Positions 3,117-30,602 of a DNA stretch of 64,000 nt are shown here, one piece after another. Made by a program: the position numbers and the translations under genes. The notes below the pieces were generated by a model, which was given only the letters and a program-made list of their open reading frames with translations, searched no databases and was not told where the DNA came from. Each line of letters opens with the position of its first letter. Position 1 is the stretch's first letter. Where the stretch lies: positions 1 to 64,000 of IMG/VR virus record IMGVR_UViG_3300018080_008436; one strand, written 5' to 3'.

Positions 3117-3349
3117 AGTGTTATCTCCTTTGTTTACTATAACATAGCATACCGAGAGAATAAGTCAAGCTGTCCAGGTGCTTTTCTTTCTTTCGAAAAG
3201 AGTACTACTAAAGTGGTTCAGATCAAGATCTTGATCGATGATCAAAATCAGCAGTATTCTTTTCGGAAATGACAGAAGCCAGAAAAAGGCCCTCAACCGA
3301 AGTCAAGGGCCATTGCGCAATCCCCTCTGGATTTGGGACCTAAATTGTC

Positions 3350-4875: not shown

Positions 4876-5223
4876 TGTTGTTACCCTTTGTTTTGTTGTT
4901 CCCTTGGTAGCCCTTTTGCTGATACCCCTACAGTAGCATCTCTAAAGAGGAAGTCAAGCGCAGTTGTGCGATTTTTTTATTTTCAAAAACAATACTCCTG
5001 TTTCTGTTCAGCAGTACTCTTTTTGAAAACCAGGTGGTTTTCCGCCAGAAAAAAATCGAGAAAAAATTCGAAAAAAATCGGAAATTCTGTCACAGCCGTT
5101 CTGGAGTTATTTCTAAAAAGAGTACTACTGTTTCACTTCAGCAGTAGTCTTTTTGGAATAGCCTCCAGATACCACAAAAAAAGCCCCCGTCCGAAGACGA
5201 GGGCCAGGGCCAGGGGCCAGGGG

Positions 5224-5382: not shown

Positions 5383-5838
5383 GTTTCTGCTCCCTTGATT
5401 TGTTAGACTGTACTGATAAGATAGCATCTCTGCCTGGGATGTCAAGTCAGATTTCCAAGTAAAATTTTTTGTACTAGCATAAGAAATCTTATGGCTTCGA
5501 GCTACCCCCGCATCCCTTTCAAAAACAGTACTCCTGATTTGATTGAGCAGTACTCTTTTTGTAAGCCAGGTTCAGGCGGAAGGCGATCTGCGGGACAGAA
5601 AAAAGCAAAAAAATCGGAAATCCCTGTCACAGCCGTTCTGGGGCTATTTCTAAAAAGAGTACTACTGTTTCACTTCAGCAGTAGTCTTTTTGTAATCCAG
5701 GTGCTGGAAGGCGAGGGCTTCGGTCAAAGTCATCTGGGAACAAAAAAAGCCCTCGACCAAACGGGGCCGAGGGCTTGACGACGAGGGGAGAATAACCTCG
5801 TCAGCAGAACGGAAGTAGAGAAGAAATGAACAAAGACC

Positions 5839-6120: not shown

Positions 6121-6496
6121 TTAAAAAGAGTACTCCTAATTTTATTCAGCAGTACTCTTTTTGAAAGCCAGATGCGGGGAAGCCAGATCCGCCAGATTCA
6201 GATGAGGCTGATCTTTCTGTCATGCGCATACATCATTCAGTGGGTAGAGGCGATCCAGGATCGAGTAAGTGTTTTCAAAAAGAGTACTTCTGTTTTAATT
6301 GAGTAGTACTCTTATTGTACGAACTCGCTATCCAGATAGGCTGACCTTCATAAGATTTCTTATATAAATACAAAAATATTTGTCTTTTGCTGTCACGCCT
6401 TCCAGCGGCTCATTTCTAAAAAGAATACTACTGTTTTGATTCAGCAGTACTCTTTTTGGAATCCAGGTGGCACTCGAAGGCTTCGCGGGAACACTA

Positions 6497-8946: not shown

Positions 8947-9599
8947 TGTCTTTCTTCCTCTTGTTACTATCAACATAGCATAGATATGGTTGATGTCAAT
9001 CCTATTTAGAAAAAATAAATGAGATCGAGGAGGGTCTCCAGGATCGAGGAGGTATTTCTAAAAAGAGTACTACTGTTTTAATTCTGTAGTACTCTTTTTG
9101 AAAATCCTGGTGTGTATAATCACACTTCTTCACACCTCAAAATCAGGCTTATTATAATAGAATATAATATTATAATACAGAGAGATGAGCTTGATCTTAT
9201 ATAAAAAATAGAAAGAGAGTATATAGAAAGGTATCAAAACAATGGTATCAACACATTAGACACGTAAAGATACACGTGAAGATACACGTGGGCTATTATA
9301 CCAGCACGGGGTTTTCTAAAAAGAGTACTTCTGTTTTGATTGAGTAGTACTCTTTTTGAAAGGTCTGCTGGAACTCGAAGGCGCTTGGCGGGAATGAGAA
9401 ATAAAAAAGCCCTCTCGCAGATTGAGAGGGCTTTGCGCAGAGGAGGGAGGGGCCTCTGCATTGTGGAAAATTGAGGGCCTAAGGTCGGGCCTCAGGAGGG
9501 AGAGCGACCTCCCTAACTTTTCTTGCTAGTCGCTATTGCAATTCAGTCACCTCATTGATTGTTAAATACCTGCGTCCAGCTTCCCTCGGATCAGGAATT

Positions 9600-10477: not shown

Positions 10478-10669
10478 GATACTTTCTCCGTTTGTTCTAC
10501 TTCTATCTTAACTCGTTACCAACTGTTGTCAACCTTATTCGCAAAAATACTGAAGAAAAAATGATGAGTTCCATCGGAAATCCAGGAGTGTCTGGATCTG
10601 GTATTATTTTCAAAAAGAGTACTACTGTTTTATTTCAGCAGTACTCTTTTCAGAAATAGACCTGGTGGT

Positions 10670-10733
10670 CCGCCAGGCTGACCTTCTTCCGCCAGGAAGC
10701 TGACCTTCTTCCGCCAGGAAGCTGATCTTCCGC
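10670..10733. repeat. tandem ~22-bp repeat CCGCCAGGAAGCTGACCTTCTT x3 (imperfect)
   Basis: Direct reading. Confidence 0.75.
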
Positions 10734-13831: not shown

Positions 13832-14101
13832 ATCAAATCTCCTGTTTGTTCCTGTTTCAGTTTATAAGTCACAATAGCATCTCTATTGGGGATGTCAAGC
13901 GCATTTAGAAAAAATAAATCCAGCTTGATGAACCTGGCTTCCCTGGGCCTGAACTAGTGTTTCAAAAAGAGTACTCCTGTTTTTATTCAGGAGTACTCTT
14001 TTTAGAAGATGGTCCAGAGGTCCCAGGTCCTGGCTTTCTGGGCACTAAAAAACCCCCCGCCTCGAAAGGCAGGGGGCTTGACTGGGATCTCCTATCGGAG
14101 A

Positions 14102-21993: not shown

Positions 21994-22211
21994 TCTCTCT
22001 CCTCCTTAGTCGCCCCCTACTGAGCAATCGGTAGGGGGTTTTCTTTTGCCTGGACCTTTCCTGGACAGCGGCTCGCCTTTCAAAAAGAGTACTACTGTTT
22101 TAATTCTGTAGTACTCTTTTTAGAAGAGATAGGGCACACCAGGCTACCCATCAGGGCACAAAAAAAGCCCCTACCGAAGTAGGGGCCAGGGAATAAACAC
22201 GAGGAGATGGT

Positions 22212-22400
22212 TTATTTCCCTAACATATCTGCAACTGGGGCCTTAGTATTGCGAGTTTCGATCTCCTTTTCCTCATCGGTTCCGACTCGAACCTTGAGAA
22301 CCTTGAACCATTTGTCGCTTGGGATGTCTTCAGGAGTTTTGATCAACAGAGTTCGAGTGCTATTCTCGAATTGAATGAAGATTGGGAAGTACGATTTCAT
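22212..22400 (-). CDS. hypothetical protein
   Basis: ATGA overlap. Confidence 0.55.
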   Translation of the reverse strand: MKSYFPIFIQFENSTRTLLIKTPEDIPSDKWFKVLKVRVGTDEEKEIETRNTKAPVADMLGK

Positions 22401-24123: not shown

Positions 24124-24209
24124 TGGTAGCTAGGGGGGGACTCGAACCCCCAATCCCAAAGGGCGGTTGATTTTAAGTCAACTGCGTATACCAATTCCGC
24201 CACCTAGCC
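24124..24209 (-). tRNA. tRNA-Leu(TAA)
   Basis: Cloverleaf with variable arm, GTTGA-CTTAAAA-TCAAC, CCA. Confidence 0.95.
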
Positions 24210-24215
24210 ATAAAA

Positions 24216-24575
24216 TTATTCCTCATACTCCGCAATGAACTTCAATGCTTCTGCAAGTGCATCAGCAATCTGTTTGTTCGTTGGATTCTCAGGAAGAGCA
24301 TCAAATGTTGACTCCATCAAACGTTCCCGATATCTACGACGACAAAGGATGATCAACTCTTTGTCAAATGCCTTGCGCCTATCATCTGACAAATGTGAAA
24401 TTGTTTTGGGCGACGGAAGCAAAGGAATGTACACCGCTCTAGGTTGATGATACTGAGGCTTCGATTGTGGAATATAAGCCGAGATCAACATCCCAATCGC
24501 AATTCCAAGAAGTGCGCATAAAGGATATACAGTCGGAAGAAACCATTTTGGAAATGTTTTCTTTTCTTCAGACAT
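24216..24575 (-). CDS. membrane-anchored hypothetical protein
   Basis: N-terminal TM. Confidence 0.65.
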   Translation of the reverse strand: MSEEKKTFPKWFLPTVYPLCALLGIAIGMLISAYIPQSKPQYHQPRAVYIPLLPSPKTISHLSDDRRKAFDKELIILCRRRYRERLMESTFDALPENPTNKQIADALAEALKFIAEYEE

Positions 24576-24774
24576 TCGGTTCACCTTTGAGTGACATTAC
24601 ATAGGCTTCCATGCAATCATATTCTGATTGATTCGGATTGTCATACTCTGACTCTCGAAACCAAACGTAGTGTTTCTGAACCAAATCCCATAACAGATCT
24701 GTTTCCAAATCAGGATATTTGATTCGAAGGAGTTCTGCTAAACAGAACATTGAATAGTTCATTGAGCCTTTCAT
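24568..24774 (-). CDS. hypothetical protein
   Basis: SD. Confidence 0.65.
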   Translation of the reverse strand: MKGSMNYSMFCLAELLRIKYPDLETDLLWDLVQKHYVWFRESEYDNPNQSEYDCMEAYVMSLKGEPNV

Positions 24775-24793
24775 TTCCTTTCTCCGTTAGAAA

Positions 24794-24911
24794 TGGGAGC
24801 CAGCCAAAGTTCCTGAACTTCGTTCAAGAGGCGGATAACCAAGTAACCCGTAAGCTTGCCATCAAACGAATTAAAAGCTTGTCCGAAGGACATCTCCTTG
24901 GCTGACTCCCA
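24794..24911 (-). ncRNA. candidate structured ncRNA A
   Basis: 15-bp closing stem GGGAGTCAGCCAAGG/CTTTGGCTGGCTCCC, C(UUCG)G hairpin. Confidence 0.6.
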
Positions 24912-24917
24912 AAAAGA

Positions 24918-25017
24918 TGGGATTGACATCTTTTGGCAAATGCACACCTTGAATCCACTTTCAAGTTCCAGTTATCCCGCTTACCTTTTACGTGGACTTT
25001 CAGCAGGACCAATCCCA
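24918..25017 (-). ncRNA. candidate structured ncRNA B
   Basis: Closing stem TGGGATTG/CAATCCCA, internal CTTGAA/TTCAAG hairpin. Confidence 0.5.
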
Positions 25018-25022
25018 AAAAT

Positions 25023-25262
25023 TTACGCTTCCTCGGTCTCAGCCTGGATCTGTTTGACATCCGAGAACAGAGTCAGAGTGACTTCCTGGGGAACCTCATA
25101 GATGGTTGAAGGTTTCCCCTTACCATCTGCTCGACGCTTCTGACCAACTTCTTTGACCATTCCTTTGTCCTGAAGAACATTCAGAAGGTTGCTGGCCTCG
25201 GCATAGTTGTTGAAGCCTCCCATTTCCTGGAATTCTTTTTTCGTGACTTCGACTGTTTTCAT
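25023..25262 (-). CDS. small winged-helix-like protein
   Basis: LLNVLQDKGMVKEV...GKGKPSTIY. Confidence 0.6.
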   Translation of the reverse strand: MKTVEVTKKEFQEMGGFNNYAEASNLLNVLQDKGMVKEVGQKRRADGKGKPSTIYEVPQEVTLTLFSDVKQIQAETEEA

Positions 25263-25272
25263 GTCTATCTCC

Positions 25273-25590
25273 TTATGTTTTCGGATCGAATGCTACTTCT
25301 CCACACATCTTAATGAAAGCCCTAGCCATAATCATAATGAAAGAGACCTGGACTATCTCAATAAAAAACAAAACAAAAAACGCATCAATGATACCCAAAT
25401 GAGTGTACCAAAGATATCCAACAGCAATCAGGTTCCCTGGAATCCAACCAAAGAAGAAAGAAACAGATCGACGGTATTCCATCATAGGATGAGCCGCCTT
25501 AAGTATCAACATCACTATCAACGGTGGTATGAAAAGAAGGCAAACTGCTGTCGCCCAGGCCATCGTTCCTATGAATGTCGGTTCTTCCAT
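25273..25590 (-). CDS. membrane protein
   Basis: Three hydrophobic segments; promoter upstream. Confidence 0.65.
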   Translation of the reverse strand: MEEPTFIGTMAWATAVCLLFIPPLIVMLILKAAHPMMEYRRSVSFFFGWIPGNLIAVGYLWYTHLGIIDAFFVLFFIEIVQVSFIMIMARAFIKMCGEVAFDPKT

Positions 25591-25868
25591 TGTTATGCTC
25601 CAGTATCTTTACTAATCAACATAACCCCCATTAACATTAAGTCAAGGCCATTTACAAAAAATAATAACCCGCTGTCGATCCAGGAGCCGCCGCCATCTTC
25701 TAAAAAGAGTACTACTGTTTTTATTCTGTAGTACTCTTTTTGAAAATCAGGACCCCAGCCGCCACACCAGCAGACCCTGATCGGACCTGAACAACAAAAA
25801 AGACCCCTACCAATTAAGGTAGAGGCCCATATGCCTATATGTACGAGATAAGCAACTATATTATACAA

Positions 25869-30117: not shown

Positions 30118-30602
30118 ACTAAATCCTCTGTTTAGGGTTTGCGATCTCAACAGCAACAACATAGCATCCCAATACCAGGCTGTCAAACCCATTTAGCAAA
30201 AATAATTCGAGTTTCTATTTTTACGGTCTCAAATTATTATAAGCGGTTAAACTATTAAAAGACCCCTTCGGGGCTTTTTATAGTTTACTTTTTTACTTTT
30301 TAAAAAGAGTACTACAGAATAGAAACAGGAGTACTCTTTTTGAAAATAGGAGTATCAGCCGCCAGGTCCTGGATCGAGTTCATTGCCTGAATCGCCTGGT
30401 TCGACAGCCGCCCACACCAGGCTTCTTTCAAAAAGAGTACTACAGAATTAAAACAGAAGTACTCTTTTTAAAAGGTCTGCTGGAGACCAGGCTAAAAGGT
30501 TTGCTGAAGACCATGATGGGCTGTTTATATACTACGTATATAAAAAAAATGGCTCAGGAACAAAATCCCAAGCCATTTGAATTGTTTAGAATGTATGTGA
30601 AA

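What the first reader, a model, noticed from the sequence alone, without database searches (positions are those of the whole stretch)
24794..25017. Two tandem closed-stem RNAs near the tRNA cluster
Seen: 118-nt and 100-nt units 6 nt apart, each beginning TGGGA and ending TCCCA; one has a 15-bp closing stem with G-U pairs on the minus strand and a C(UUCG)G tetraloop. They fill an otherwise non-coding gap. I do not recognise SRP, 6S or riboswitch motifs.
Basis: partly seen in the sequence, partly recalled or inferred. Interest (0 to 1): 0.6.

Follow-up and report, generated by a model that had tools for sequence, protein, structure and literature searches.

The report
New structured RNA in huge phages
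One of the two proposed RNAs (the 100-nt unit) is a real, previously uncatalogued, pseudoknotted four-way-junction RNA conserved behind a small winged-helix gene in a clade of ~0.5-Mb environmental phages, while the 118-nt unit is an unusually stable but unconserved structure that may lie inside a small protein gene.

Summary
On the minus strand a 100-nt unit (A, 25017..24918) and a 118-nt unit (B, 24911..24794) lie 6 nt apart, each closed by a long-range stem.

Unit A is a genuine RNA family. Seven related phage contigs carry it at 70-86% nt identity, directly after a homolog of the upstream 79-aa winged-helix gene, which is only 35-51% identical. Of 33 predicted pairs, 26 show compensatory changes, and a 5-bp loop-loop pseudoknot also covaries. 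It matches no Rfam 15 family, is not tRNA-like and occurs once in the 476-kb genome.

Synteny is kept upstream and breaks downstream. In relatives, unit A is followed by a U-tract or terminator and then a promoter. My best guess (about 0.3) is a cis-acting element at an early-operon boundary, put/EAR/conAn2-like, possibly working with the winged-helix protein. A 3'-UTR-derived RNA or RNP is nearly as likely.

Unit B folds exceptionally well (z -5.35; 14th of 11,903 genome windows) but has no homolog anywhere. It overlaps an open 52-codon frame with gene-like codon usage, no usable SD, and a start codon buried in unit A. Whether it is RNA or coding stays open.

The shared TGGGA/TCCCA ends are not conserved in relatives. 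The link to tRNAs is only neighbourhood.

The parts
24918..25017 (-). Unit A, a conserved pseudoknotted four-way-junction RNA. The closing stem is 8 bp here, within a 100-nt unit; relatives have an 11-bp stem and span 105-106 nt. P1 pairs 25017-25010 with 24925-24918. P2 pairs 25009-25002 with 24981-24974. P3 pairs 24965-24960 with 24953-24948. P4 pairs 24943-24938 with 24931-24926. The pseudoknot pairs UCCAC (24996-24992) with GUGGA (24958-24954).
   Evidence: blastn and nhmmer hits in 6 syntenic loci. RNAalifold on MAFFT alignments gives 19/34 and 26/33 pairs with compensatory changes. Pair counts are 95.9% paired with 0/500 shuffles as good. The pseudoknot is 100% paired and 3 of its 5 pairs covary. 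cmsearch scores 82-128 bits.
24912..24917 (-). U-rich linker (UCUUUU) directly after P1 of unit A. Most relatives have a U-tract here: U7 in L019, U8 in L020, U5 in L043.
24794..24911 (-). Unit B, a lineage-specific and very stable multibranch structure with a 16-bp closing stem (3 G-U pairs) and a cUUCGg hairpin. Whether it is a separate RNA, a processing or insulator structure, or part of a small ORF is unresolved.
   Evidence: Fold: dG -51.2, z -5.35. Genome rank 14/11,903. No homolog found with nhmmer, blastn or CM R2.
24771..24929 (-). Candidate 52-codon ORF (ATG at 24929, inside P4 of unit A; alternative starts GTG 24947 and ATG 24893). Its stop overlaps the next gene's start as ATGA.
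   Evidence: ORF list and frames. Codon-usage LLR of 0.155-0.17 per codon lies in the range of real genes. Null P is about 0.004-0.07. No SD at a usable spacing. Gene callers disagree: 52 aa, 40 aa or none. No real relatives. AF2 single-sequence pLDDT is 76.7, helical.
25023..25262 (-). p79, a small winged-helix protein gene. Its stop codon lies 5-6 nt before unit A's closing stem (6 nt by the covariance-model alignment). It is the conserved upstream partner of the RNA in all 8 loci.
   Evidence: tblastn gives 37-51% identity in every RNA-bearing locus; alignment A6 gives 35-51%. AF2 pLDDT 84.5. Foldseek gives weak winged-helix hits (ROK, RTP, GntR, TFE-alpha, MarR).
25273..25590 (-). p105, a small predicted membrane protein and first gene of the conserved unit p105-p79-RNA.
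   Evidence: tblastn gives 35-48% identity in relatives; synteny tables.
25618..25645 (-). Sigma-70-like promoter candidate (TTGACT-16-TATGTT) upstream of p105. It is preceded by a terminator (25828-25801) and a palindromic repeat (about 25745-25700).
   Evidence: Promoter and terminator scan. Palindrome positions. Multi-copy signal at 25693-25751.
24568..24774 (-). p68, the first gene downstream. It has a strong SD and is not conserved in relatives, so synteny breaks after unit A.
24124..24209 (-). tRNA-Leu(UAA), the nearest tRNA, on the same strand. No promoter candidate was found between unit A and p68; the scan's only minus-strand candidate before the tRNA lies inside p68 (24644-24616).

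Best explanation
Shown: unit A (25017..24918, minus strand) is a member of a previously uncatalogued structured RNA family. It is about 105 nt long: a closing stem P1, three hairpins P2-P4 around a four-way junction, and a 5-bp pseudoknot between the P2 loop and the P3 loop. Several unpaired stretches are strongly conserved: GAAU.UCCACG.AAAUGGUAAG, AACUGGAAC and AGUGGA. It follows a small winged-helix gene (p79) on the same strand, 1-20 nt after the stop codon, with no promoter signal seen between them, in the conserved unit promoter - membrane protein - p79 - RNA. This unit occurs in a clade of roughly 0.5-Mb phages from sediment and seawater metagenomes.

Inferred: the RNA acts at the operon boundary on the elongating RNA polymerase or its own transcript, as a cis-acting read-through (antitermination) element. 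This would resemble HK022 put, EAR or conAn2, possibly with p79 as protein partner as in the conAn protein+RNA pair. It would let transcription continue into the variable downstream genes, which in this phage are p68, p122 and tRNA-Leu, with no promoter candidate between unit A and p68.

Unit B (24911..24794) is not a second member. It is a lineage-specific, extremely stable long-stem structure in the slot where relatives carry terminator hairpins and a promoter. It is either a non-coding processing or insulator structure (for example an RNase III-type substrate) or the folded mRNA of a 52-codon ORF.

The confidence given is for the mechanism. That unit A is a real conserved structured RNA I put at about 0.95.
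For: Reality of unit A:
- It is 70-86% nt identical in syntenic loci whose flanking p79 protein is only 35-51% identical.
- 26 of 33 pairs show compensatory changes on an unfitted MAFFT alignment.
- 95.9% of cells are paired against 78.7% in shuffles (0/500 as good), and slid controls give 36-50%.
- The pseudoknot is 100% paired and 3 of its 5 pairs covary.
- G-U pairs fit only the gene strand.
- There is no Rfam hit.

Placement:
- It always follows p79 within 1-20 nt.
- P1 is followed by a U-tract and/or a classical terminator hairpin, then TTGACA promoters, in L019, L020, L022, L026 and L040.
- Downstream genes differ between loci.
- In the window no promoter-like site lies between unit A and p68; the scan's only minus-strand candidate before tRNA-Leu is inside p68 at 24644-24616.

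Precedents:
- HK022 putR lies about 270 nt downstream of the PR start site and acts alone on RNAP (PMC9378689).
- conAn is a protein gene followed directly by an antiterminating RNA (PMC8191782).
Against: - There is no functional or expression data. No RNA run holds this phage.
- The architecture (four-way junction plus pseudoknot, about 105 nt) differs from put (two stem-loops, about 70 nt) and from conAn2 (260-600 nt).
- In most relatives a promoter follows the terminator, so read-through is not obviously needed.
- P1 plus a U-tract looks like a terminator itself.
- Winged-helix proteins of this size are usually DNA-binding repressors, and p79 may simply bind the palindromic operators of the early region.
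- The conserved linkage is to the upstream gene, which equally fits an RNP or a 3'-UTR-derived sRNA.
Confidence: 0.3

Rival explanations
1. Unit A is a stable small RNA released from the 3' end of the p105-p79 transcript. Its ends would be set by cleavage after the p79 stop codon and by P1 plus the U-tract or terminator. It would work in trans, most plausibly as an RNP with p79 or as a decoy or titrator of that winged-helix protein.
For: - The gene order p79 then RNA is strictly conserved, with 1-20 nt spacing, in 8 of 8 loci, while everything downstream varies.
- Terminator-like 3' ends are typical of sRNAs.
- Highly conserved unpaired nucleotides suggest a specific binding surface.
- p79 has a conserved basic wing, GKKRRxDGRGKPxxIYE.
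Against: - No promoter of its own was seen.
- Nothing shows that p79 binds RNA. Its fold matches DNA-binding winged-helix factors best, and only weakly.
- No expression data exist.
Confidence: 0.27
2. Unit A is a riboswitch-like sensor. Ligand binding in the junction would stabilise P1, which with the following U-tract forms or masks a terminator and so sets read-through into the downstream genes.
For: The architecture is aptamer-like: a closing P1, parallel helices locked by a loop-loop pseudoknot, and conserved junction nucleotides. P1 is directly followed by U-runs in several members.
Against: - Downstream genes are not conserved or functionally coherent, unlike for riboswitches.
- Promoters follow the terminators in most relatives.
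- I could not see a convincing alternative pairing between the P1 3' strand and the terminators on reading the sequences.
- No riboswitch class is matched.
Confidence: 0.1
3. Unit A is only a 3'-end stabiliser or processing signal for the operon mRNA, acting as an exonuclease block or an RNase P/E/III site, with no further function.
For: It sits at the operon's 3' end, is a compact stable fold, and lies in a tRNA-rich region where processing enzymes act.
Against: Simple hairpins do this job elsewhere in the same genome. A pseudoknot and about 30 conserved unpaired nucleotides are more than protection needs. No tRNA-like features were found.
Confidence: 0.1
4. Unit B is not an RNA gene. The region encodes a small protein of 52 aa (or 40 aa), translationally coupled to p68, and the strong fold is a property of its mRNA, incidental or regulatory.
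For: - A 63-codon open frame ends in an ATGA overlap with p68.
- The codon-usage score lies within the range of real genes and above 95% of spurious same-strand ORFs.
- Only 0.4-0.8% (against background) or about 7% (against shifted frames) of random open frames score as high.
- Two of three gene callers call it.
- AF2 gives helices at pLDDT 76.7.
- No homolog of B as an RNA exists.
Against: - No SD lies at a usable distance, whereas 61% of long ORFs have one, with spacing peaking at 6-9 nt.
- The ATG at 24929 lies inside the conserved P4 helix of unit A, and the ATG at 24893 and its SD-like AAGGAG are inside or next to the 16-bp stem.
- The strongest-folding windows whose folds I inspected show terminator, palindrome or tRNA features.
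- There are no protein relatives in 5.8 and 1.8 billion-protein searches; the only other hits are to long proteins matched in several short stretches, which I take as spurious.
Confidence: 0.4
5. Both units are chance inverted repeats in an intergenic spacer, with no function.
For: Long G-U-tolerant stems are common: 12 observed against 5-8 expected for 16 bp or more. Unit A alone has only z -2.5.
Against: Unit A shows covariation and conservation beyond that of its protein neighbours. Unit B has z -5.35 and sits in the top 0.12% of the genome.
Confidence: 0.03

Closest known systems
HK022 put RNAs (putL/putR), RNA-only processive antiterminators of a lambdoid phage
   Same: A phage early-operon element that folds in the nascent transcript and lies upstream of terminators. 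putR lies about 270 nt downstream of the PR start site (PMC9378689), comparable to unit A after the small winged-helix gene.
   Different: put is about 70 nt with two stem-loops and a short triplex. Unit A is about 105 nt, a four-way junction with a loop-loop pseudoknot. There is no sequence similarity, and function is untested here.
conAn bipartite antitermination system of Gram-positive conjugative plasmids (ConAn1 protein + conAn2 RNA)
   Same: A protein gene is followed immediately by a structured RNA element in the same transcript. The RNA acts in cis and the protein adds processivity (PMC8191782). This is the same gene order as p79 then unit A.
   Different: conAn2 is 260-600 nt and poorly conserved. 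ConAn1 is 172 codons in pLS20. The system sits on plasmids, not phages. Homology of p79 to ConAn1 was not tested, and p79 matched no Pfam family significantly.
EAR (eps-associated RNA) of Bacilli
   Same: An RNA-based processive antiterminator located within or upstream of an operon (PMC8191782 discussion).
   Different: No Rfam family is hit by unit A, whether or not EAR is among them. EAR is tied to polysaccharide operons, not phage early genes.
tRNAs and tRNA-like RNAs (Y RNA/YrlA, skipping-rope and related mimics; T4 stable RNAs C and D in the tRNA cluster)
   Same: About 100 nt, cloverleaf-like topology (closing stem plus three hairpins), located among phage tRNA genes.
   Different: - No T-loop or anticodon features; ARAGORN and RF00005 are negative.
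- The tertiary contact is P2 loop to P3 loop, not D loop to T loop.
- No encoded CCA, unlike nearly all tRNAs of this phage.
- No Ro/TROVE gene in the genome.
- No blastn similarity to any of 50,697 phage records.
- The comparison with the T4 RNAs rests on my memory of them and is only a lead.
Riboswitch aptamers with a junction and loop-loop contact (purine, lysine, SAM-I classes)
   Same: A P1-closed multi-helix junction, helices tied by a loop-loop or loop-junction pseudoknot, and conserved junction nucleotides.
   Different: No class is matched in Rfam. It sits 3' of a gene rather than 5' of a coherent regulon, and the downstream genes vary.

Membership tests
Any Rfam 15 family (4227 models, including SRP, 6S, riboswitches, ribozymes, Y RNA, C4 antisense and skipping-rope) | Covariance-model score at or above the gathering threshold | tested here: not met
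   Only tRNAs reach threshold in the window and in 7 related loci. At E<=10, only sub-threshold matches to unrelated families overlap either unit or the L020 homolog; the best are bxd_4 at 15 bits (E 1.8) and SIB_RNA at 23.5 bits against a gathering score of 56.
tRNA / tRNA-like | Cloverleaf with D, anticodon and T arms, T-loop consensus, 3' NCCA | tested here: not met
   ARAGORN finds nothing, also with introns allowed and a lowered threshold. RF00005 gives no hit at E<=10. No CCA follows P1, whereas nearly all of the phage's 59 tRNAs encode CCA.
Bacterial Y RNA (YrlA/YrlB) | Ro60/Rsr (TROVE) gene in the genome, usually adjacent; Ro-binding stem plus a tRNA-like domain | tested here: not met
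   PF05731 is absent from the 476-kb genome. RtcB is present but 174 kb away. No Y RNA model was hit.
HK022 put-type antiterminator RNA | About 70 nt with two stem-loops forming a V that binds the RNAP beta' zinc-binding domain; suppresses downstream terminators in cis | tested here: not met
   The architecture is a four-way junction plus pseudoknot of about 105 nt. The position relative to a small regulator gene and terminators is analogous. The activity is not testable with these tools.
conAn-type bipartite antitermination | Protein gene followed directly by a cis-acting RNA element; both needed for long-range read-through | tested here: inconclusive
   The gene order p79 then RNA is conserved in 8 of 8 loci. 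Homology of p79 to ConAn1 was not tested, and function is not testable.
Intrinsic (Rho-independent) terminator | GC-rich hairpin immediately followed by a U-run | tested here: inconclusive
   P1 of unit A is followed by UCUUUU here and by U5-U8 in L019, L020 and L043, but the 'hairpin' is a 105-nt branched fold. Unit B is followed by AUUUCUAA, not a U-run. The scan reports only the inner UUCG hairpin.
Conserved structured RNA (general criterion) | Compensatory base changes supporting a common structure, beyond controls | tested here: met
   Unit A meets it: 26/33 pairs, 0/500 shuffles reach the observed values, and slid controls give 36-50% paired against 95.9%. Unit B could not be assessed because no homologs exist.
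Protein-coding gene (unit B region) | Open frame, gene-like codon usage, usable start with SD, and homologs | tested here: inconclusive
   Open frame and codon usage are met. SD and an accessible start are not met. No homologs were found.

The most novel reading that the evidence does not exclude
Unit A and the 79-aa winged-helix protein form a new phage RNA-protein module. It would be a fourth, structurally unrelated class of RNA-based processive antiterminator, or another RNAP- or ribosome-directed RNP. Huge phages would use it to control read-through from an early operon into their own tRNA genes. Unit B would be a dedicated long-stem processing or insulator element of the same transcript.
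Probability: 0.2. Interest if true: 0.8.

Novelty: new variant of a known kind. Interest (0 to 1): 0.55.

Why it matters
Huge phages carry many genes and RNAs that reshape host transcription and translation, but very few of their non-coding RNAs have been defined.

Unit A is a compact RNA with unusually clean covariation from only eight sequences. It has a supported pseudoknot, a fixed protein-gene partner and no Rfam family. That makes it a well-defined target for structure determination and for a simple read-through or binding assay.

[quoted passage not shown] If unit A acts on RNA polymerase, it would add a fourth.

Tried and rejected
Searches for relatives that found nothing:
- Paralogs of A or B in the 476-kb genome, using blastn, nhmmer and covariance models.
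- GenBank phages, blastn in 'distant' mode.
- Relatives of p79, p68 and the phosphoesterase in IMG/VR by single proteins. The one p68 hit, L002, is not syntenic. The p79 profile also found none.
- Word search with p79, which returned only itself.
- Pattern scans of IMG/VR and of GTDB genome representatives, which gave only chance matches that the covariance model rejects. Three of the six metagenome pattern hits were also chance.
- More distant phosphoesterase contigs (36-41% identity), which have no unit A within 10 kb.

Data that carried no information:
- Four other contigs of the same phage are identical across the gap, so they show no variation.
- Laying contigs of three DNA runs at 80% likeness gave no variants either.
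- No RNA run holds the phage.

Hypotheses rejected:
- Stop-codon recoding as an explanation of the gap. The genome has a tRNA(CUA), but the gap has no in-frame TAG; its in-frame stops are TAA.
- Y RNA, because there is no Ro gene.
- A tRNA with an intron.
- The palindromic AGTACTCTTTTT repeats, which are a different element and absent from the gap.

Technical failures and weak results:
- Two genome-wide folding scripts timed out. A coarser one worked.
- The terminase Pfam look-ups failed and were not pursued.
- AF2 of the 52-aa ORF and the exhaustive HMMER search did not settle whether unit B is coding.

Full report
CONTEXT

The window is the first 64 kb of a 476,248-bp virus record. The same phage occurs on contigs of about 524 kb from sediment and seawater metagenomes. 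Nearly all of its long ORFs (49 of the 50 of at least 500 aa) lie on the minus strand. It has 59 tRNAs, a tmRNA, a tRNA(CUA) and an RtcB gene. Cultured phages are only remotely related: the best DnaB hit is Bacillus phage G at 25% identity.

THE OBSERVATION

The gap 24775-25022 lies between two minus-strand genes that both have strong, well-spaced Shine-Dalgarno sites. These are p79 (25262-25023) and p68 (24774-24568).

- Unit A is 25017..24918, 100 nt. It has an 8-bp closing stem and three hairpins, with dG -31.3 and z -2.5.
- Unit B is 24911..24794, 118 nt. It has a 16-bp closing stem with three G-U pairs and a cUUCGg hairpin, with dG -51.2 and z -5.35.

The plus strand folds worse. Unit B's window ranks 14th of 11,903 genome windows by composition-corrected MFE. 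The higher-ranked windows whose folds I inspected show terminator, palindrome or tRNA features. A bare 16-bp G-U-tolerant stem is not rare on its own, at 12 observed against 5-8 in shuffles.

Rfam 15 finds nothing, even at E<=10. ARAGORN finds nothing, also with introns allowed.

FINDING RELATIVES

Direct searches with the flanking small proteins failed. Other contigs of the same phage are identical across the gap.

The metallophosphoesterase gene about 850 nt upstream has homologs at 50-58% identity on metagenome contigs. I fetched their neighbourhoods. These show conserved gene order: DUF6557 - GP88 - ... - phosphoesterase - small membrane protein - p79 homolog.

UNIT A IS A CONSERVED STRUCTURED RNA

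blastn and nhmmer with the gap hit exactly one place in each of these loci, directly after the p79 homolog. Identity over unit A is 70-86% nt, while p79 itself is only 37-51% identical in those loci by tblastn.

A pattern from the conserved loops, and then a covariance model (R1), added L026, L040 and L043. This gives eight distinct members.

An unfitted MAFFT alignment with RNAalifold gives 33 pairs, 26 of them with compensatory double changes. With only the first five sequences the figure was 19 of 34.

Counting pairs on the model alignment gives 95.9% paired cells against 78.7% in shuffles, with 0 of 500 shuffles as good. Structures slid by 1-3 columns give 36-50%.

Reading the alignment, I noticed that UCCAC in the P2 loop is complementary to GUGGA in the P3 loop, and that the two covary. 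L019 has UCUAC/GUAGA and L043 has CUUAC/GUGAG. Tested formally, this 5-bp pseudoknot is 100% paired and 3 of its pairs covary.

Many pairs alternate through G-U, which fits only the gene strand. So this is RNA rather than a DNA element.

The RNA spans a constant 105-106 nt from P1 to P1 in the relatives. It begins 1-20 nt (mostly 5-8) after the p79 stop codon. It occurs once in the genome.

I did not find it in IMG/VR, in GTDB representative genomes, or next to more distant phosphoesterase homologs. It matches no Rfam family in any member.

WHAT SURROUNDS UNIT A

p79 is predicted with pLDDT 84.5 as a small winged-helix domain. Its structural matches are weak and are mostly DNA-binding winged-helix factors. 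No sequence family matches it significantly.

Downstream of unit A, synteny ends: p68 and p122 have no counterparts in the relatives. In the relatives, P1 is followed by a U-run and/or a classical terminator hairpin. A TTGACA-type promoter and unrelated genes come next.

In the window, the upstream terminator (25828-25801), a palindromic repeat (about 25745-25700) and a promoter-like site (25645-25618) precede p105. No promoter-like site lies between unit A and p68; the only minus-strand candidate before tRNA-Leu sits inside p68 at 24644-24616. So p68, and probably p122 and tRNA-Leu, appear to depend on transcription passing through unit A.

HOW UNIT A MAY WORK (INFERENCE)

The fixed partner is upstream and the variable part is downstream. 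This argues against a riboswitch for a defined regulon. It argues for a function tied to the p105-p79 transcript or to p79.

The position, after a small regulator gene and before terminators in a phage early operon, is comparable to HK022 putR, which lies about 270 nt downstream of the PR start site (PMC9378689). A protein gene followed directly by a cis-acting antiterminator RNA is the conAn layout (PMC8191782).

I therefore rank a cis-acting read-through element first, at about 0.3. A 3'-derived stable RNA or RNP with p79 follows at about 0.27. A riboswitch-like terminator switch and a pure stabiliser or processing signal each get about 0.1. None of these was testable here.

UNIT B

No homolog exists in the genome or in any related locus, by nhmmer, blastn or a covariance model built on its fold.

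For coding:
- The frame is open for 63 codons and ends in an ATGA overlap with p68.
- Codon usage scores like real genes.
- That score lies in the top 0.4-7% of random open frames.

Against coding:
- No SD lies at a usable distance.
- The first ATG is part of the conserved P4 helix of unit A, where it arises from helix covariation.
- The second ATG and its SD-like sequence are locked in or next to the 16-bp stem.
- There are no protein relatives.

AF2 gives generic helices. I leave this at roughly 0.4 coding and 0.55 non-coding structure.

If non-coding, unit B occupies the slot where relatives have terminator hairpins. L026 has two long-stem hairpins there, with z -4.8. Unit B may be an RNase III-type processing site or an insulator. 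Long-stemmed terminators are reported to resist processive antitermination (PMC10325885, abstract only). That is only a lead, because unit B lacks a U-run.

VERDICT

Unit A is a real, uncatalogued RNA family with a defined secondary structure and pseudoknot and a conserved protein-gene partner. Unit B is unproven. The common TGGGA/TCCCA ends and the tRNA connection are incidental.

Noticed in passing
window 3191-3268, 5009-5130, 5546-5666, 6151-6288, 8990-9110, 10550-10710, 13910-14070, 22030-22230, 25700-25745, 30330-30441: The early region is built from repeated intergenic cassettes. Each has a strong intrinsic terminator, then a near-perfect palindrome AAAAAGAGTACT(N)CNGAAT..AAAACAG(N)AGTACTCTTTTT, then a TTGACA-type promoter. 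The palindrome is multi-copy (depth spike at 25693-25751) and absent from the related phages. It is probably the operator of a phage repressor, and p79 is one candidate.
   Followed up: partly
G000 409748-409822 (-), 192972-193352 (-): A tRNA with anticodon CUA (called 'Pyl' by ARAGORN), a possible amber suppressor, and a phage tmRNA with tag AKKVIEFPTASAVAA. I did not test whether late genes use TAG as a sense codon.
   Followed up: no
G000 78813-78899, 79926-80014, 195678-195768, 222350-222437, 282409-282499, 303188-303278, 318294-318381: Several tRNAs for normally short (class I) species, namely Gly, Met, Asn, Lys, Glu, Ile and Cys, are 87-91 nt long. This suggests long variable arms or insertions. 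Nearly all 59 tRNAs encode their 3' CCA.
   Followed up: no
G000 198526-199671 (+): A full-length RtcB RNA ligase gene (224 bits) lies next to a plus-strand tRNA cluster and near the tmRNA. No Ro/TROVE partner exists in the genome.
   Followed up: partly
L042 1289-2431 (-), 5729-6250 (+); L048 2755-5412 (+): Contigs carrying phosphoesterase homologs (47% and 41% identical) hold TnpB/Cas12f-like (OrfB_IS605) genes right next to the phosphoesterase gene. One locus also has a Cas3-like helicase.
   Followed up: no
L026 1814-1925 (+): After its unit A homolog this phage has two consecutive long-stem hairpins that share the arm GAAAGCCUCUUC. The second is followed by a U-run (z -4.8). This looks like a duplicated terminator in the slot that unit B occupies in the window.
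   Followed up: partly
window 25593-25868 (-): The 91-aa ORF listed here spans a terminator, the palindromic repeat and a promoter-like site, so it is probably not a gene.
   Followed up: partly
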